Below are positions 31,862 through 40,143 of a DNA stretch of 64,000 bases, in pieces. A model generated the notes under the pieces. It worked only from the letters and a program-made list of their open reading frames with translations. It ran no database searches and was not told the origin of the DNA. The DNA lies in the IMG/VR virus record IMGVR_UViG_3300031951_021456, positions 124,001-188,000 of that record. One strand, written 5' to 3'. Numbering within the stretch: position 1 is the stretch's first letter; every line of letters begins with the position of its first letter. A program made the translations under genes and the position numbers.

Positions 31862-32080
31862 TTAATAAATTTCTAGTTCTTCAACAGTAACATAACAATA
31901 AATTTTACTGTTACAGGATAGCGCCCAAGTATCATATTCTTCATTTCTCAATTTTTCAGCTTCAGCCTCTGCATCAGAGCTGTGGAAGAATAGCTTTTTT
32001 AATTTTGGGGTGGCATAATAATCCCACCCCTCGGCAAAAACGCCATAAACGGTTTTAGAGTTTGTCATTTGTCTATCCAA
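31862..32080 (-). CDS. Small hypothetical protein
   Basis: ORF track; part of the tightly packed minus-strand island. Confidence 0.55.
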   Translation of the reverse strand: MDRQMTNSKTVYGVFAEGWDYYATPKLKKLFFHSSDAEAEAEKLRNEEYDTWALSCNSKIYCYVTVEELEIY

Positions 32081-32366
32081 TTAATTCTTGAACTTCATCA
32101 ATGGGAATTTCGTCAATTTCATCTAAAATAACACACTCAGGGGGATTTAAATTAAAGGATCCTTTAATTGGCTGAATAACATCTATTAACCATTCTCCAA
32201 ACGAATCAATATCGCCAAGAGAGTCTTCTTCATGTTTTTCAGGATTAAATATAACACAAAATGTCACCTTATATCCAATTAGTGATTTTTTATTTTGTTT
32301 ATATTCTTGAATTTGTCTTTCAAGCTCATGAATTTCTTCTATAGAAAGATCTTTAAGATTAATCAT
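32073..32366 (-). CDS. Small hypothetical protein
   Basis: ORF track; minus-strand island. Confidence 0.6.
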   Translation of the reverse strand: MINLKDLSIEEIHELERQIQEYKQNKKSLIGYKVTFCVIFNPEKHEEDSLGDIDSFGEWLIDVIQPIKGSFNLNPPECVILDEIDEIPIDEVQELIG

Positions 32367-32394
32367 TTTTCTTAATTAATAGTTTATTTTTTAG

Positions 32395-32631
32395 TTAAAT
32401 TCCATAGTAATCGCAAAAAAGTTTAGGCTTATATGCAATAATATAATAGTCAGGAACATCGTTTGAGGTATTTTTACTATTTGTATCAACAAATTCTTTT
32501 TGCGCTTCTTCATATGAATCAAACATTTCAGTCCACGTACCATTCACCCAACCACTTTCACTTTCTCTGTATTCCACAACCCAAATATTACTTAAGGTGT
32601 TTAGTAATTCATTTATGTTTACTCTGGCCAT
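32395..32631 (-). CDS. Small hypothetical protein
   Basis: Start revised to ATG 32631 (MARVNINE), downstream of the TAAGAT -10; WVVEYRESESGW motif. Confidence 0.6.
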   Translation of the reverse strand: MARVNINELLNTLSNIWVVEYRESESGWVNGTWTEMFDSYEEAQKEFVDTNSKNTSNDVPDYYIIAYKPKLFCDYYGI

Positions 32632-32657
32632 TGTGTGGAACCTTGTAGATTTCTTCA

Positions 32658-32714
32658 ATCTTAACACACCTTTTGGTGGTTGAGCTGTTTTGGGTGCGGT
32701 TCTTAAAGTGTCTG
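32658..32714 (-). promoter_or_regulatory. Dyad-motif promoter D (CAGACACTTTAAGAACCGCACC-N29-TAAGAT)
   Basis: Degenerate copy of the motif at 54080, 56726 and 59353 with similar spacing to an extended -10 (TGt TAAGAT). Confidence 0.5.
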
Positions 32715-32872: not shown

Positions 32873-35515
32873 ATGTCAGACAAACACTATCTTGGGAATC
32901 CACTATTAAAAAAAACGAACACTAATATAGAGATAACTGAAGAGCAATTAATTGAACTTGGAAAATGTTCAATGGACCCGAATTATTTTGCAAGAAATTA
33001 TATGCAAATTGTAACCTTAGATAAGGGTCTACAGAATTTTGATATGTATCCATTTCAAGAAAAGATGTTAGAGTCTTTCCATAAGAATCGCTTTAATATA
33101 GCACTTCTACCGCGCCAAATGGGTAAGCCATTATTTATTCAAACTCCAATACCAATCCCGGATGGATGGTCTACAATTAAAGAGATAGAAGTTGGAGATA
33201 GTGTATTGGCTCCATCTGGTAAAGAGGTTAAAGTTGTTTCAAAAACTGAAACAATGTATAATAGAGATTGTTATAAAATTCATTTTGATACTGGTGAAGA
33301 AATTATTGCAGATTATGACCACCCATGGGAAGTGAATTGTAGTTATTGGTCTGCGGGTAAGAGAGTGGCAACAACCAAAGAAATCTTTGATATTTACAAA
33401 ACAAGAAAGCCTAATATTAGAGGTGGTGGAGTACAAGGACCGATATACATAGAAAAAAGTAATCCCGTAGAATTTTCCAAAAAAGATTTAAAAATTGAAC
33501 CTTATACTTTAGGTTTATGGTTGGGAGATGGTCATTCTAGGTGGGGAGTTATAACTGCTCATAAAGATGATTACGACTTTTATAAGACTAGAATGGAAGT
33601 TGAACTAGAATGTCCGATTGATAATAGCATCATTTTTAAAGTTAAAAATTTACATACAAAATTAAAGGTCGCTAAACTTCTCAATAATAAACACATCCCG
33701 CAAGAGTATTTACGGTCAACCTTTGACGATAGGCTAAAACTTCTACGTGGATTAATGGATTCTGATGGATCATTAACTAAAAATTCAAGATCTTTTGAAT
33801 TTTATCAAAAGAATTATTCATTGATCAAACAAGTTGCAGAACTTTTAGCTTCTTTGGGAATTAAATCTAGAATAAGAGATAAAATTATTAATGAAGAAAC
33901 CTACTACACTCTTTCATTTACTACAACTGAAATTGTTTTTGCTCTTCCCCGAAAAACTGCTTATATTGATTTAAACAAAAGGACGAGAAAAAATGAGGAG
34001 AGACATTATATTCATCATATTGAAAAGGTTGATAGTGTGCCTGTCGCTTGTATTCAAATTAACAGCGAAGAGCATCTATTTTTATGTGGAAAATCTTTTA
34101 TTCCCACGCATAATTCAACAACTGTAGTTTCTTATCTTTTATATTATGCCATTTTTAATGAGAATGTAACTATTGCTATTCTAGCAAATAAGGCAAAAAC
34201 TGCTATAGGTATTCTCAATAGGTTACAAACAGGTTATGAAAATCTACCAAAATGGATGCAGCAAGGTATTAAAAGTTGGAATAAAGGTTCATTAGAACTT
34301 GAAAATGGCTCAAAAATTGTAGCAAACTCAACTTCAGCGACGGCTGTGCGCGGAGATTCATATAATATCATCTTTCTAGATGAATATGCTTTCGTGCCTA
34401 GTCATTTGGCCGATAGCTTTATGAACTCTGTTTTCCCTACAATTACATCAGGAAAAGAATCAAAAATTATTATCGTTAGTACACCATGGGGTATGAATCA
34501 TTTCTATAAATTATGGAACGATTCTATAAAAGGATTGAGTGGTTATGCACCAATACGAGTATATTGGAATGAACATCCAAATAGAGATGAAAAATACAAA
34601 AAGGAAATTATTAGTAAAATTGGCCAAAATGCCTGGGATGCAGAATATGAATGCCAATTCCTAGGCTCATCCGACACACTCATAAGTGGTCAGAAACTTG
34701 GAAATCTCGTAATAGAAGAACCATTAAAAAGCCGAGATCTCTTAGATGTTTATGAAGATCCACAACCAGATAAAGTCTATGTAATAACGGTTGATGTCGC
34801 AGAAGGTGTTGAATTAGACTATTCCGTTTTTGTTGTATTTGATGTTTCCCAAATTCCATATAAAGTTGTTGCAAAATATAGAAATAATGATATTCCAAGT
34901 TTAAGATTTCCAGATGTCATTGAGCCTGTAGGAAGACATTATAATGATGCATACATTTTATGTGAAGTAAATGGAGAGGGGTGTCAGGTTGCTAATATTC
35001 TGCATCTTGAATTAGATTATCCAAATATGCTTCAAACTAAAACACTAGGACGAGGTGGCCAGGTAGCTGGTCAAAATTTCTCTGGAAAGGGGGTTAAATA
35101 TGGAATTAAGATGTCTAAGCCAGTTAAAAAGAATGGATGCCTTAATTTAAAAACTCTTATTGAAGAGGATAAACTAATCTTTAATGATAACGAAATAATT
35201 GATGAACTTACCACATTCGTTTCCAAATATAATAGCTATAGTGCTGAGGAGGGTAAGAATGACGATTTGGCTATGTGTTTGGTTTTATTATCTTGGCTAT
35301 GCACTCAAGATTATTTTAAAGAAATTACTGAAACTGATATTCGCAAAAAAATAAGAGAAGAGCATGAGAAAGAATTAGAAGATAATGACACAACACCTTT
35401 TGGGTTTATTTCAACCGTTGATAACTCAAATACTGAAGTTGATTCAGAAGGAAACATTTGGTTTGCTACGGATAATGAGGAAGATTTTTCTTATTTTTGG
35501 AACTATAACTTTTAA
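32873..35515 (+). CDS. gp17: Terminase large subunit gp17, intein-containing
   Basis: YLGNPLLKK; Walker A RQMGK|STT split by intein; Walker B IIFLDEYAF; nuclease ITVDVAEG and DDLAMCL. Confidence 0.95.
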   Translation: MSDKHYLGNPLLKKTNTNIEITEEQLIELGKCSMDPNYFARNYMQIVTLDKGLQNFDMYPFQEKMLESFHKNRFNIALLPRQMGKPLFIQTPIPIPDGWSTIKEIEVGDSVLAPSGKEVKVVSKTETMYNRDCYKIHFDTGEEIIADYDHPWEVNCSYWSAGKRVATTKEIFDIYKTRKPNIRGGGVQGPIYIEKSNPVEFSKKDLKIEPYTLGLWLGDGHSRWGVITAHKDDYDFYKTRMEVELECPIDNSIIFKVKNLHTKLKVAKLLNNKHIPQEYLRSTFDDRLKLLRGLMDSDGSLTKNSRSFEFYQKNYSLIKQVAELLASLGIKSRIRDKIINEETYYTLSFTTTEIVFALPRKTAYIDLNKRTRKNEERHYIHHIEKVDSVPVACIQINSEEHLFLCGKSFIPTHNSTTVVSYLLYYAIFNENVTIAILANKAKTAIGILNRLQTGYENLPKWMQQGIKSWNKGSLELENGSKIVANSTSATAVRGDSYNIIFLDEYAFVPSHLADSFMNSVFPTITSGKESKIIIVSTPWGMNHFYKLWNDSIKGLSGYAPIRVYWNEHPNRDEKYKKEIISKIGQNAWDAEYECQFLGSSDTLISGQKLGNLVIEEPLKSRDLLDVYEDPQPDKVYVITVDVAEGVELDYSVFVVFDVSQIPYKVVAKYRNNDIPSLRFPDVIEPVGRHYNDAYILCEVNGEGCQVANILHLELDYPNMLQTKTLGRGGQVAGQNFSGKGVKYGIKMSKPVKKNGCLNLKTLIEEDKLIFNDNEIIDELTTFVSKYNSYSAEEGKNDDLAMCLVLLSWLCTQDYFKEITETDIRKKIREEHEKELEDNDTTPFGFISTVDNSNTEVDSEGNIWFATDNEEDFSYFWNYNF
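33128..34114 (+). mobile_element. Class 3 intein (329 aa) with LAGLIDADG homing endonuclease
   Basis: Starts PLFIQTPIPIPDG (Pro1); block B ADYDHPW; LGLWLGDG and LRGLMDSDG; block F VACIQI; ends PTHN before Ser. Confidence 0.9.
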
Positions 35516-38430: not shown

Positions 38431-40143
38431 ATGGCCAAATTATTTGGATTTTCTATTGAGGATAATGGTAAATTATCTAAATCTATTGTTTCACCAGTTC
38501 CACCAAACAATGATGATGGTTCAGATCATTATTTAACTACTGGTTTTTTTGGTTCTTATGTAGACATTGAAGGTGTCTATAGAACTGAATTTGATTTGAT
38601 TCGTAGATATAGAGAAATGTCACTTCATCAAGAAGTTGATGATGCCATTGAAGATATTGTAAATGAAGCAATTGTTTCTGACACAAATGATTCCCCAATT
38701 GAGATTGAACTTTCAAATCTTAATGCTAGTGATGGAATTAAAGAAGTAATTCGTAAAGAATTTAAAACGATTCTTGAGATGTTAGATTTTGATAGTAAAT
38801 GCCATGAGATCTTCAGGAATTGGTATATTGATGGAAGATTACATTACCACAAACTAATTGATCTTAAAGATCCCCATGCGGGTATTCAAGATATTCGCTA
38901 TATTGATTCAATGAAGATTAGGTTTGTTAGACACACTAAAAAGCAGAATAAAAATAACACGTTATCTAAGATTTATGGCGAAGAAAATGTAAATGAACAA
39001 ATTTTTCCAGAATTGGAAGAATATTTTGTCTATAACCCAAAGCAGACCTATCCAGTAGGAGCAGTAGATATGTCTGCTGGTTCTGAAAAGGGAATAAAAT
39101 TCACAAAAGACTCTATTGCTTATTGTACTTCTGGACTCGTTGATAGAAATAAAGGAACTGTTCTTTCTTGGATGAATAAAGCAATTAAACCTCTCAATCA
39201 ACTTAGAATGATTGAGGATAGTATTGTCATTTATCGTCTCAGTAGAAGCTCAGAAAAAAGAATTTTTTATATTGATGTTGGCAATATGCCAAAACCAAAA
39301 GCTGAGCAATTTCTTCGTGAAACTATGATGCGGTATCGCACCAAATTAAACTATAATAGCATTACAGGTGAAGTTGATAATTCTAGACGCTTTATGAGTC
39401 TTATGGAAGATTATTGGTTGCCTCGTAGAGAAGGTGGAAGAGGAACTGAAGTTACTACTCTTCCGGCGGGCAATAATCTCGGTGAATTAGCTGATTTAGA
39501 TTACTTCAAAAGAAACCTTTATAAATCACTAAATGTACCTGAAACTCGTATTGGCGGAGATAGTGGGTTCAACTTAGGTAGATCTACCGAAATATTAAGA
39601 GATGAAGTAAAATTTACAAAATTTGTAGGACGGCTGCGTAAGAGATTTTCTCGCTTATTTTTAGATCTTTTAGGAACACAATTAATCTTAAAAAACATTG
39701 TAACTCCAGAAGACTGGAAAAGAATGTCTGAGCATATTCAGTTTGATTTTCTATACGATAACCATTTTGCTGAACTTAAAGAATCTGAATTATTTACAGA
39801 CCGCTTAAATATGGTCTCAATGGCTCAACCATATGTTGGTAAATATTTTTCACAGGATTACCTCCGTAGAAAAATTTTACGGCAAACAGATGAAGAAATT
39901 ATTGAACAAGATAAGATAATTGAAAGCGAAATTGAAAATGGAGTTATCCCAGATCCAAATACTCCAATTGATCCACAAACTGGACAACCAATTTTAGATG
40001 TTGCTCCAGAAGAAATGCCACCACCTGAAGCTACACAAGCCACATCTGCAGTTGATAACATTAAAGGAGAATCTGGTAAAGTTCCAGTAACTCCAGATAT
40101 AAAGATTAAAGAGCCTAAAATGCCCAAAGGTGGTGAAATCTAA
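38431..40143 (+). CDS. gp20: Portal protein gp20
   Basis: WYIDGR, NQLRMIEDSIVIYR, FYIDVGNMPK, EDYWLPRREGGRGTEVTTLP. Confidence 0.96.
   Translation: MAKLFGFSIEDNGKLSKSIVSPVPPNNDDGSDHYLTTGFFGSYVDIEGVYRTEFDLIRRYREMSLHQEVDDAIEDIVNEAIVSDTNDSPIEIELSNLNASDGIKEVIRKEFKTILEMLDFDSKCHEIFRNWYIDGRLHYHKLIDLKDPHAGIQDIRYIDSMKIRFVRHTKKQNKNNTLSKIYGEENVNEQIFPELEEYFVYNPKQTYPVGAVDMSAGSEKGIKFTKDSIAYCTSGLVDRNKGTVLSWMNKAIKPLNQLRMIEDSIVIYRLSRSSEKRIFYIDVGNMPKPKAEQFLRETMMRYRTKLNYNSITGEVDNSRRFMSLMEDYWLPRREGGRGTEVTTLPAGNNLGELADLDYFKRNLYKSLNVPETRIGGDSGFNLGRSTEILRDEVKFTKFVGRLRKRFSRLFLDLLGTQLILKNIVTPEDWKRMSEHIQFDFLYDNHFAELKESELFTDRLNMVSMAQPYVGKYFSQDYLRRKILRQTDEEIIEQDKIIESEIENGVIPDPNTPIDPQTGQPILDVAPEEMPPPEATQATSAVDNIKGESGKVPVTPDIKIKEPKMPKGGEI

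What the first reader, a model, noticed from the sequence alone, without database searches (positions are those of the whole stretch)
33128..34114. Class 3 intein starting with proline, inserted in the terminase Walker A motif
Seen: extein junction RQMGK|STT; residue 1 is Pro rather than Cys/Ser; Trp at block B (DHPW), Cys at block F (VACIQI), Thr-His-Asn before Ser+1; both LAGLIDADG motifs keep their acidic residues (GDG, DSDG). Established: class 3 inteins lack the N-terminal nucleophile and use the W-C-T triplet with a block F Cys branched intermediate. Inference: packaging ATPase activity depends on splicing through a single Cys, which may be redox-sensitive in an oxygenic host, and the element is probably still mobile.
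Basis: partly seen in the sequence, partly recalled or inferred. Interest (0 to 1): 0.6.

Follow-up and report, generated by a model that had tools for sequence, protein, structure and literature searches.

The report
Class 3 intein in phage terminase

Summary
ORF 32873..35515 (880 aa) is a T4-type large terminase. A 329-aa in-frame insert (33128..34114) sits between Lys and Ser of the Walker A motif.

The insert meets every sequence criterion of a class 3 intein:
- Pro1, His65 and Trp67.
- Cys308 at block F position 4.
- Thr-His-Asn followed by Ser+1.

These residues align one-to-one with the catalytic residues of the solved class 3 DnaB inteins (6BS8, 6RIX). The insert also carries an intact two-motif LAGLIDADG endonuclease. 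An AlphaFold model (pLDDT 94) matches PI-SceI and those class 3 inteins.

Comparative data support mobility:
- The endonuclease is under purifying selection (dN/dS 0.09-0.16).
- The same codon boundary is empty, holds this intein, or holds an unrelated split intein in sister phages.
- Two of those sister genomes are 97-99% identical outside the site.

It is not new in kind. The class 3 prototype (Bethlehem DnaB) also begins with Pro and sits in a P-loop. This intein family also occurs in at least 817 phage records.

The redox idea has a real precedent, the Cys48-Cys118 trap of M. smegmatis DnaBi1. Cys48 is conserved here, as is Cys320, so "a single Cys" is imprecise. The cyanobacterial host is only inferred. 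Verdict: a new member of a known kind, of modest interest.

The parts
32873..35515 (+). Large terminase (T4 gp17-type TerL) precursor gene, 880 aa, one open frame including the intein
   Evidence: ORF list. Pfam Terminase_6N 3.6e-18 and Terminase_6C 2.2e-11. PHROG 36964 terminase large subunit 7.8e-117. 58% identical over the full length to Synechococcus phage B23 gp267.
32873..33127 (+). N-extein (85 aa), ending ...LPRQMGK, the first part of the Walker A motif
   Evidence: Its last 60 nt abut exactly on the empty allele in L007 (alignment A1). The empty allele PRQSGKST aligns with T4 gp17 SRQLGKTT.
33128..34114 (+). Class 3 intein, 329 aa (Pro1 ... Asn329)
   Evidence: phmmer hits to 6BS8, 6RIX and 6RIY, E 2e-22 to 3e-21, on both splicing halves. 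AlphaFold2 model with mean pLDDT 94.4. Foldseek matches PI-SceI at 5e-19 and MchDnaB1 at TMt 0.85.
33128..33130 (+). Pro1 codon (CCA), a non-nucleophilic first intein residue
   Evidence: Sequence. In the 120 closest relatives residue 1 is Ala 108, Pro 7, Ser 5.
33269..33271 (+). Cys48 codon, homologous to Cys48 of M. smegmatis DnaBi1, which is the disulfide partner of that intein's catalytic Cys
   Evidence: Aligned RDCYKIHF / RPCYVVEF. Invariant in 120/120 close relatives and present in 7/8 distant ones. Its role in DnaBi1 is described in PMC6195587.
33320..33328 (+). Block B His65-Pro66-Trp67 (His B10 and the Trp of the WCT triplet)
   Evidence: Aligns to His65/Trp67 of MchDnaB1 and Msm DnaBi1. 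Both residues are invariant in 120/120 relatives.
33485..33997 (+). LAGLIDADG homing-endonuclease domain (about intein residues 120-290)
   Evidence: Pfam LAGLIDADG_3 4.5e-13 and Hom_end 9.4e-05. Foldseek matches PI-SceI, PI-PfuI and I-DmoI. dN/dS is 0.089 and 0.157 against two relatives.
33509..33538 (+). LAGLIDADG motif 1, LGLWLGDGHS (catalytic Asp134)
   Evidence: Sequence. The G-D-G form is kept in about 118 of 120 relatives.
33740..33772 (+). LAGLIDADG motif 2, LLRGLMDSDGS (catalytic Asp213)
   Evidence: Sequence. The D-x-D-G form is kept in 118 of 120 relatives.
34049..34051 (+). Cys308 codon, block F position 4: the predicted initiating nucleophile that forms the block F branched thioester
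   Evidence: Aligns to Cys118 of 6BS8 and Cys124 of 6RIX (residue roles). Invariant in 120/120 relatives.
34085..34087 (+). Cys320 codon (FLCGK), a third family-invariant cysteine, 12 residues after the nucleophile
   Evidence: Invariant in 120/120 close relatives. Ala in Msm and Mch DnaB1. Variable in distant relatives. Its position across the beta-hairpin from Cys308 is inferred only from the DSSP string of the model.
34106..34117 (+). Block G Thr327-His328-Asn329, then Ser+1 (the C-terminal splice junction)
   Evidence: Sequence. T, H and N are invariant; +1 is Ser in 97 and Thr in 23 of 120 relatives. Thr327 aligns to Thr143 of MchDnaB1.
34115..35515 (+). C-extein (466 aa plus stop): the rest of the Walker A motif (STT), the remainder of the ATPase domain and the RNase H-like nuclease domain
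   Evidence: Pfam Terminase_6N 1.4e-18 and Terminase_6C 7.1e-12. 56-59% identical to cyanomyovirus gp17 proteins. Up to 78% identical to metagenomic TerL.

Best explanation
The 329-residue insert is a functional class 3 intein with an embedded LAGLIDADG homing endonuclease. It sits between the invariant Lys and the Ser of the Walker A (P-loop) motif of a T4-type large terminase, in a roughly 248-kb freshwater myovirus.

**How splicing most likely proceeds.** This is inferred from the class 3 pathway established for the MP-Be DnaB and mycobacterial DnaB1 inteins.
1. The precursor is translated with its P-loop split by 329 residues, so it cannot bind ATP productively.
2. Cys308 (block F position 4), activated by His65 and positioned with Trp67 and Thr327, attacks the Lys-1/Pro1 peptide bond. 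This forms a block F branched thioester.
3. The N-extein is passed to Ser+1, giving the block G branched ester.
4. Asn329 cyclises and an O-N shift leaves a contiguous ...RQMGKSTT... P-loop. The product is an active 551-aa packaging ATPase-nuclease plus the free intein.

**How the element most likely spreads.** The free intein (or the precursor) acts as a site-specific endonuclease on intein-less terminase alleles during co-infection. Recombinational repair then copies the element in (homing).

**Shown versus inferred.** The sequence, the fold, the exact boundaries, purifying selection and the patchy distribution are shown here. Splicing chemistry, endonuclease activity and any redox control are inferred.
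For: **Boundaries and site**
- The exteins abut without gap or overlap on a natural empty allele (A1; regex tally of RQxGK[ST] in 108 intein-less TerL proteins).
- T4 gp17 Walker A aligns at this position.

**Class 3 signature**
- Pro1, His65, Trp67, Cys308, Thr327-His328-Asn329 and Ser+1 are all present.
- They align position for position with Cys124-His65-Thr143/Trp67 of MchDnaB1 and Cys118 of Msm DnaBi1.
- They are invariant in the 120 closest relatives and kept in 8 of 8 distant relatives from E. coli, Klebsiella, Gordonia, Mycobacterium, Brevibacterium and Vibrio phages.

**Fold**
- The AlphaFold2 model has pLDDT 94.4 and pTM 0.92.
- Foldseek matches PI-SceI (5e-19, TMq 0.73), TliVMA and PI-PfuI over the whole length.
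- It matches the class 3 inteins 6RIX and 6BS8 at TMt 0.81-0.85.

**Endonuclease**
- Both LAGLIDADG motifs keep their Asp residues.
- dN/dS is 0.089 and 0.157, similar to the exteins.

**Mobility**
- On a C-extein tree the window lies in a clade with SH-aLRT support of 100. The clade has 18 rows: 6 with this intein, 7 labelled 'other' (mostly fractured genes with a split intein; at least one, P0125, is a truncated gene call still carrying this intein) and 5 with an empty site.
- At least 7 changes of state are forced by well-supported branches.
- L004 (this intein type) and L006 (split intein plus a free-standing Vsr-like endonuclease gene) are 97-99% identical in DNA on both sides. Their homology breaks at the insertion codon.

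**Precedent**
- Class 3 inteins in phage terminase P-loops, and a Pro1 prototype, are described in PMC2807308 and PMC5050341.
Against: - No biochemical evidence exists for this protein. Splicing, the branched intermediate and DNA cleavage were not and cannot be tested here.
- Intein and extein identities to relatives track each other (both about 55-65%).
- The intein's GC and GC3 match the genome. This copy is therefore long resident, and recent movement of this particular copy is not shown.
- The clearest turnover evidence (L004 against L006) concerns a 72%-identical relative, not the window's own copy.
- Pfam's Intein_splicing model does not detect the splicing domain. The class assignment rests on alignment to solved class 3 inteins, not on a curated family cut-off.
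Confidence: 0.85

Rival explanations
1. The intein splices, but its endonuclease no longer homes. The element is fixed and inherited vertically in this lineage, and the domain is kept for folding or splicing or for another DNA-binding role.
For: - Intein and extein divergence track each other across relatives.
- Intein composition equals genome composition (GC 32.0 against 33.2; GC3 20.4 against 20-22).
- The sister P0002 also carries the intein.
Against: - Both catalytic Asp residues are kept, and dN/dS is 0.09-0.16 across the endonuclease domain.
- The extein tree needs at least 7 gains or losses.
- One intein-bearing allele (P0084) is nested among near-identical empty alleles.
- Near-identical genomes differ only at this site.
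Confidence: 0.2
2. Splicing is conditional. Oxidation, or zinc, traps the nucleophile Cys308 in a disulfide or metal complex with Cys48 or Cys320. Terminase maturation, and hence DNA packaging, would then be gated by the redox state of the infected, possibly photosynthetic, cell. This adds to the best explanation and does not replace it.
For: - The closest solved homologue, Msm DnaBi1, is reversibly inhibited by H2O2 through a Cys48-Cys118 disulfide, and its C48 mutants do not splice (PMC6195587).
- The same intein is reported as reversibly inhibited by zinc and by reactive chlorine species (titles of PMC7360933 and PMC8557812).
- Cys48 aligns exactly here and is invariant in 120/120 relatives, as is Cys320.
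- The model's strands 309-311 and 317-320, joined by a 5-residue turn, would place Cys320 opposite Cys308. This is an inference from the DSSP string.
Against: - No experiment has been done and no atomic distances are available.
- Cys48 is also conserved in relatives from E. coli, Gordonia, Vibrio and Brevibacterium phages. Its conservation is therefore not tied to oxygenic hosts and may be structural.
- The host is not established, and psbA/psbD and hli are absent.
- Any catalytic thiol is oxidisable in vitro without this being regulation.
Confidence: 0.12
3. The intein uses another mechanism. It could be class 2-like, with direct attack of the +1 residue on the N-terminal junction, or it could be a class 1 intein with mis-set boundaries.
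For: Residue 1 is non-nucleophilic, as in class 2 KlbA inteins.
Against: - Class 2 inteins lack the WCT triplet. Here the WCT triplet is invariant and +1 is Ser.
- No Cys, Ser or Thr lies at or next to the boundary fixed by the empty allele.
- In MP-Be DnaB the block F Cys is absolutely required (PMC2807308).
Confidence: 0.04
4. The insert is a decayed, non-splicing relic and this terminase gene is dead.
For: None specific. There is only the absence of direct evidence for splicing.
Against: - The 880-aa frame is open.
- All catalytic residues are intact and under strong purifying selection.
- This is the only terminase-intein locus found in a genome rated complete.
- The same allele recurs at 0.9 or more of its sampled words in freshwater metagenomes from several studies.
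Confidence: 0.02

Closest known systems
Mycobacteriophage Bethlehem DnaB intein (MP-Be DnaB), the class 3 prototype (Tori et al. 2010, PMC2807308)
   Same: - It begins with Pro1.
- It has the WCT triplet with an obligate block F Cys and a Thr/Ser +1 residue.
- It is about 340 aa long with a LAGLIDADG endonuclease.
- It is inserted in a helicase/ATPase-type host protein, the group that paper describes as mostly invaded in the ATPase P-loop.
   Different: - Its host protein is a DnaB helicase, not a terminase.
- Its -1 residue is Gln and its +1 residue is Thr, where the window has Lys and Ser.
M. smegmatis DnaBi1 (6BS8) and M. chimaera DnaB1 (6RIX/6RIY), class 3 mini-inteins
   Same: - They are the best solved-structure matches (E 2e-22, TMt 0.81-0.85).
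- His65, Trp67, the block F Cys, Thr-His-Asn and Cys48 are all aligned.
- They share the GK| P-loop insertion site.
   Different: - They start with Ala1.
- As solved they lack an endonuclease domain.
- They have Ala where the window has Cys320.
- They are bacterial helicase inteins.
- Redox and zinc control has been shown only for them (and the titles).
Terminase P-loop class 3 inteins of other phages: the mycobacteriophage TerL1-a site (PMC5050341), Synechococcus phages B3/B23, Escherichia phage ECD7-like, Klebsiella phage RaK2/K64-1
   Same: - Same intein family and same K|[ST] insertion point.
- Same LAGLIDADG architecture.
- B3/B23 are 58% identical, ECD7 37% and RaK2 36%.
   Different: - All those sampled begin with Ala1, where the window and six close relatives have Pro1.
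- The exteins are only 56% identical or less.
- RaK2 lacks Cys48.
PI-SceI, TliVMA and PI-PfuI: full-length inteins with LAGLIDADG homing endonucleases
   Same: The overall two-domain fold is shared (Foldseek 5e-19 to 7e-14, TMq 0.65-0.73). The LAGLIDADG motifs are closely similar to those I recall for PI-SceI; that comparison is from memory and was not aligned here.
   Different: They are class 1 inteins (Cys1). They sit in V-ATPase or RNR hosts. They are 13-16% identical.
Fractured terminase gene with an atypically split intein and a Vsr-like endonuclease gene (Dassa et al. 2009, PMC2677866)
   Same: It occupies the very same K|S site of the same TerL clade. In L006 it is the allelic alternative to the class 3 intein.
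   Different: It is an unrelated class 1 (Cys1) split intein. It has a short N-part (about 38 residues in L006) and a 113-123-aa C-part, and its endonuclease is a separate gene. It is not what the window holds.

Membership tests
Class 3 intein | Non-nucleophilic first residue (not Cys, Ser or Thr) | tested here: met
   Pro1 (CCA 33128-33130). The boundary is fixed by the empty allele.
Class 3 intein | WCT triplet: Trp at block B position 12, Cys at block F position 4, Thr at block G position 5 | tested here: met
   Trp67, Cys308 and Thr327 align to Trp67, Cys124 and Thr143 of MchDnaB1 and to Cys118 of Msm DnaBi1. They are invariant in 120/120 relatives.
Class 3 intein | Block B His; C-terminal His-Asn; Ser or Thr at +1 | tested here: met
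   His65, His328-Asn329 and Ser+1.
Class 3 intein | HINT fold of the splicing domain | tested here: met
   AlphaFold2 model with pLDDT 94.4. Foldseek TMt 0.85 to 6RIX and 0.81 to 6BS8. This is a prediction, not a solved structure.
Class 3 intein | Splicing through a block F branched thioester, abolished by mutating the block F Cys | not testable with these tools
   Needs a splicing reporter with C308A and detection of the branched intermediate.
LAGLIDADG homing endonuclease (intein-borne, two-motif) | Two LAGLIDADG motifs, each with the catalytic acidic residue | tested here: met
   LGLWLGDGHS (Asp134) and LLRGLMDSDGS (Asp213). Pfam LAGLIDADG_3 4.5e-13.
LAGLIDADG homing endonuclease (intein-borne, two-motif) | Pseudo-dimeric alpha-beta-beta-alpha-beta-beta-alpha fold | tested here: met
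   Foldseek matches to PI-SceI, PI-PfuI and I-DmoI.
LAGLIDADG homing endonuclease (intein-borne, two-motif) | Cleaves the intein-less allele and homes into it | not testable with these tools
   Indirect support only: dN/dS 0.09-0.16, patchy distribution and allelic turnover.
T4 gp17-type large terminase (TerL) | N-terminal ATPase with Walker A, plus a C-terminal RNase H-like nuclease | tested here: met
   Terminase_6N and Terminase_6C. The empty allele P0126 matches T4 gp17 3EZK/3CPE at 1e-82, with RQSGKST aligned on RQLGKTT.
Redox-trapped conditional intein (Msm DnaBi1 type) | A second Cys homologous to Cys48 that can pair with the catalytic Cys | tested here: met
   Cys48 is aligned and invariant. 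Its role is described in PMC6195587.
Redox-trapped conditional intein (Msm DnaBi1 type) | Reversible inhibition of splicing by oxidants through an intramolecular disulfide | not testable with these tools
   Needs in vitro and in vivo splicing assays plus mass spectrometry.

The most novel reading that the evidence does not exclude
Three cysteines are invariant in this terminase-intein clade: Cys48, the nucleophile Cys308 and Cys320. They could form a thiol (disulfide or zinc) switch that holds the packaging motor as an inactive precursor when the infected cell is oxidised, for example under high light in a cyanobacterium. Splicing would resume on reduction. The intein would then be a domesticated timer of DNA packaging, not a purely selfish element.
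Probability: 0.1. Interest if true: 0.6.

Novelty: new member of a known kind. Interest (0 to 1): 0.25.

Why it matters
In itself it matters little. Class 3 inteins in phage terminase P-loops, including ones with Pro1 and LAGLIDADG endonucleases, have been described since 2010, and this family is present in hundreds of sequenced phages.

It is useful in two ways:
- It adds a freshwater T4-like (cyanophage-related) member with the full catalytic set, plus the Cys48 that makes the mycobacterial homologue a redox sensor. It could therefore test whether redox-conditional splicing extends to a viral packaging motor.
- Its clade shows one codon boundary in three states: empty, class 3 intein, and split class 1 intein with a free-standing endonuclease. 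Near-identical genomes include the last two states. This gives a natural system for studying competition and turnover of selfish elements at a single homing site.

Tried and rejected
- **Pfam Intein_splicing (PF14890).** Searched against the whole 248-kb genome with no hit at E<=0.001. The Pfam scan of the protein flagged only the endonuclease. The curated model misses this class 3 splicing domain, so classification had to rest on solved structures.
- **NCBIfam.** It gave only weak endonuclease-region hits to intein-bearing RNR, Tes and DnaB models, all far below their cut-offs.
- **Other intein copies.** A search of the genome with this intein found only the one copy.
- **Host markers.** psbA/psbD (PF00124) and hli (PF00504) are absent. 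This is not decisive, because Synechococcus phage B23 also lacks PF00124.
- **Megablast against isolated phages.** It found only short 76-79% matches (portal and sheath genes) to Synechococcus phages. No close cultured relative exists.
- **Tori & Perler 2011 (PMC3133030).** The paper is not held.
- **Recent foreign origin.** Considered and rejected, because GC and GC3 equal those of the genome.
- **Joined exteins.** Exteins were searched apart by reference, and the natural empty allele P0126 stood in for the spliced product.
- **Unused tools.** Read laying, the large representative search and complex prediction were not used.
- **Atomic distances.** The Cys308/Cys320 adjacency is therefore only an inference from the secondary-structure string.
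Full report
**1. What is in the sequence**

The window holds one 880-codon open frame, 32873..35515 on the + strand. Pfam finds the T4-type terminase ATPase (Terminase_6N) and nuclease (Terminase_6C) only in its last 466 residues. It finds a LAGLIDADG_3 domain in the middle. PHROGs matches the whole length to phrog_36964, 'terminase large subunit', whose profile is 890 positions long. That profile therefore already includes an intein.

The neighbouring genes are a tail sheath, a tail tube and a portal downstream. Upstream is a DUF5661/DUF6321 protein. This is the T4-like morphogenesis order, also seen in Synechococcus phage B23 and in metagenomic relatives.

- ...R-Q-M-G-K, then Pro at 33128-33130.
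- D-H-P-W at intein residues 64-67.
- V-A-C-I-Q-I with Cys308.
- T-H-N ending at 34114, then S-T-T.
- LGLWLGDGHS and LLRGLMDSDGS.

**2. Boundaries and insertion site**

I did not build a joined extein model. I compared the two exteins separately with a natural intein-less allele, P0126 (locus L007), from a syntenic relative. The last 60 nt of the N-extein and the first 60 nt of the C-extein abut on it without gap or overlap...CCACGCCAAAGTGGAAAA|AGTACGACT..., which reads P R Q S G K | S T T.

108 of the 120 TerL proteins listed read RQxGK[ST] uninterrupted at this point. P0126 aligns with T4 gp17 (3EZK, E 1e-82), with LPRQSGKSTT on LSRQLGKTTV. From my own knowledge, that stretch is the gp17 Walker A motif. 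The intein therefore lies between the invariant Lys and the Ser/Thr of the P-loop. Kelley et al. call this the 'classic' P-loop intein insertion (PMC5050341).

**3. Class 3 membership**

The best solved relatives by sequence are the class 3 inteins of M. smegmatis DnaB (6BS8, E 2e-22) and M. chimaera DnaB (6RIX and 6RIY). Both halves of the splicing domain are matched.

| Window residue | Aligned residue in solved class 3 inteins |
|---|---|
| His65 | His65 (MchDnaB1) |
| Trp67 | Trp67 (MchDnaB1) |
| Cys308 | Cys124 (MchDnaB1), Cys118 (Msm DnaBi1) |
| Thr327 | Thr143 (MchDnaB1) |

These are exactly the Cys-His-Thr triad plus Trp described for that class (PMC7664689; PMC6195587).

In the 120 best relatives out of 576 with E<1e-5, His65, Trp67, Cys308 and Thr-His-Asn are invariant. 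The +1 residue is Ser in 97 and Thr in 23. Residue 1 is Ala in 108, Pro in 7 and Ser in 5, and is never Cys.

The same pattern holds in eight far-flung members: phages of Synechococcus, E. coli, Klebsiella, Gordonia, Mycobacterium, Brevibacterium (in a DnaB host protein) and Vibrio.

An AlphaFold2 model built on 36 family members is confident, with mean pLDDT 94.4 and pTM 0.92. Foldseek matches it over its whole length to PI-SceI (5e-19), the TliVMA intein and PI-PfuI. It matches the splicing domain to the class 3 inteins at TMt 0.81-0.85, and the central domain to I-DmoI.

Every defining feature that can be tested in silico is met. The chemistry itself cannot be tested here.

**4. Is Pro1 special?**

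No. The prototype of the class, the mycobacteriophage Bethlehem DnaB intein, begins with Pro1 and splices efficiently. [quoted passage not shown]

In this family Pro1 is a minority state, restricted mostly to the window's own extein clade. Ala to Pro is a single-base change.

**5. Endonuclease and mobility**

Both LAGLIDADG motifs keep their Asp residues, here and in about 118 of 120 relatives.

I compared the window gene codon by codon with the genes of P0002 (88% identical intein) and P0003 (72%). The endonuclease domain gave dN/dS of 0.089 and 0.157. The N-terminal splicing part gave 0.057 and 0.140, and the exteins 0.03-0.09. The endonuclease is therefore maintained by selection.

I built a maximum-likelihood tree of C-exteins only, with 80 rows. 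I kept all rows at 64.5% identity or more and every third of the rest. The window falls with P0002 in a clade with SH-aLRT support of 100. That clade has 18 rows:
- 6 carry this intein.
- 7 were labelled 'other'. Most are fractured genes with a split intein. At least one, P0125, is a truncated gene call that still carries this intein.
- 5 have an empty site.

Presence of the class 3 intein needs 9 changes on the tree, at least 7 of them forced by well-supported branches. One intein-bearing allele (P0084) sits among near-identical empty ones.

Two metagenomic loci give the sharpest picture. L004 (class 3 intein) and L006 are 97-99% identical in DNA on both sides. Their homology breaks exactly at the K|S codon boundary. 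At that point L006 has three genes:
- A 123-aa gene ending ...RQVGK|CFDINT..., which is the N-extein plus a short Cys1 intein N-part.
- A 342-aa gene for a DUF559/Vsr-like endonuclease.
- A 589-aa gene that starts with a 123-aa intein C-part ending ...VSHN|STAVV.

This is the 'fractured terminase' arrangement with an atypically split intein, reported from Lake Gatun by Dassa et al. (PMC2677866).

The site is therefore a contested homing site, and elements there have moved recently. For the window's own copy, however, composition equals that of the genome (GC 32.0 against 33.2%; GC3 20.4 against 20-22%). Intein and extein divergence also run in parallel. This copy is a long-term resident. 'Still mobile' is well supported for the family and inferred for this copy.

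**6. Redox idea and host**

There are five cysteines, and Cys48, Cys308 and Cys320 are invariant in the close family.

Cys48 aligns exactly with Cys48 of M. smegmatis DnaBi1. In that intein H2O2 induces a Cys48-Cys118 disulfide that reversibly blocks splicing in vitro and in the native host. C48 substitutions also abolish splicing (PMC6195587). The titles of two further papers report reversible inhibition of DnaB splicing by zinc and by reactive chlorine species.

The hypothesis therefore has a concrete structural basis and a direct precedent. It is not new as a concept.

Cys48 is also kept in relatives from phages of non-photosynthetic hosts. Its conservation does not point to oxygenic photosynthesis.

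Cys320 lies 12 residues after the nucleophile. The model has strands 309-311 and 317-320 joined by a five-residue turn, which would put Cys320 opposite Cys308 across the hairpin. I could not measure distances, so this stays an idea.

On the host:
- The genome is a 247,932-bp virus record rated complete.
- It has no psbA/psbD and no hli. Synechococcus phage B23, its nearest isolate at 58% TerL identity with 76% nucleotide identity in the portal gene, also lacks psbA/psbD.
- The gene recurs nearly word for word in freshwater metagenomes from several studies.

A cyanobacterial host is plausible but not shown.

**7. Verdict**

The element is a new member of a well-known kind: a class 3 LAGLIDADG intein at the terminase P-loop. 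It is 58% identical to the nearest intein in an isolated phage and 88% identical to a metagenomic one.

Interest is modest (0.25). The most novel reading not excluded is a thiol switch that gates DNA packaging. I give it about 10%.

Noticed in passing
L004:6001-8667 versus L006:3646-6770 (relatives; the equivalent window site is 33127|33128): Two metagenomic phage genomes are 97-99% identical in DNA on both sides, yet carry different elements at the same K|S codon boundary. One has a contiguous class 3 LAGLIDADG intein. The other has a fractured TerL: an N-part ending RQVGK|CFDINT..., a 342-aa DUF559/Vsr-like endonuclease gene, and an intein C-part joined to the C-extein. A third relative (L007) has the site empty.
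   Followed up: yes
Proteins P0075, P0089 and P0090 (relatives): These terminases carry a second mini-intein of about 147 aa that looks like class 3: Pro1, DHFW, VSCVEV, IPTMN, then Cys+1. It lies only three extein residues (CGK) upstream of the main intein. They therefore have two class 3-type inteins inside one Walker A motif. Other relatives of 1194-1455 aa carry further inteins (Pfam Intein_splicing).
   Followed up: partly
Proteins P0006-P0010 and others, 620-639 aa: Many close relatives have the N-extein, the intein and the ATPase domain but lack the Terminase_6C nuclease domain. This suggests TerL is broken again after the ATPase domain in those phages, by another fractured gene, intron or gene-call split.
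   Followed up: no
window 38431-40143 versus L004:11595-13766: The window's portal protein is 570 aa. In relatives L004, L005 and L006 it is 723 aa, with a weak Intein_splicing hit between two Portal_T4 hits. This suggests a portal mini-intein that the window lacks.
   Followed up: partly
window 31862-32667 (minus strand): Three small minus-strand ORFs (72, 97 and 90 aa) fill a 1.3-kb gap between the DUF5661/DUF6321 gene and TerL. In relatives L004 and L007, TerL follows that gene within about 30 bp, so this looks like a lineage-specific insertion.
   Followed up: no
Whole genome G000 (247,932 bp; the window is 124001-188000): No psbA/psbD (PF00124) and no hli (PF00504) were found, although the nearest isolates are Synechococcus phages. 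B23 also lacks PF00124. The record is labelled 'provirus' by its source despite being a complete T4-like genome. Some samples holding it are labelled 'fungus metagenome'; the others are freshwater.
   Followed up: partly
window 33269-33271 (Cys48): Cys48 was called non-conserved in the M. smegmatis DnaBi1 paper. It is invariant in the 120 closest relatives and present in 7 of 8 distant P-loop class 3 inteins sampled (missing only in RaK2). It therefore seems to be a family feature.
   Followed up: partly
window 33128-34114: Pfam's Intein_splicing model and the NCBIfam models do not recognise this class 3 splicing domain; only the LAGLIDADG part is flagged. Several GenBank records annotate homologous terminases as 'replicative DNA helicase', 'exonuclease' or 'HNH endonuclease', seemingly because of the intein.
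   Followed up: no
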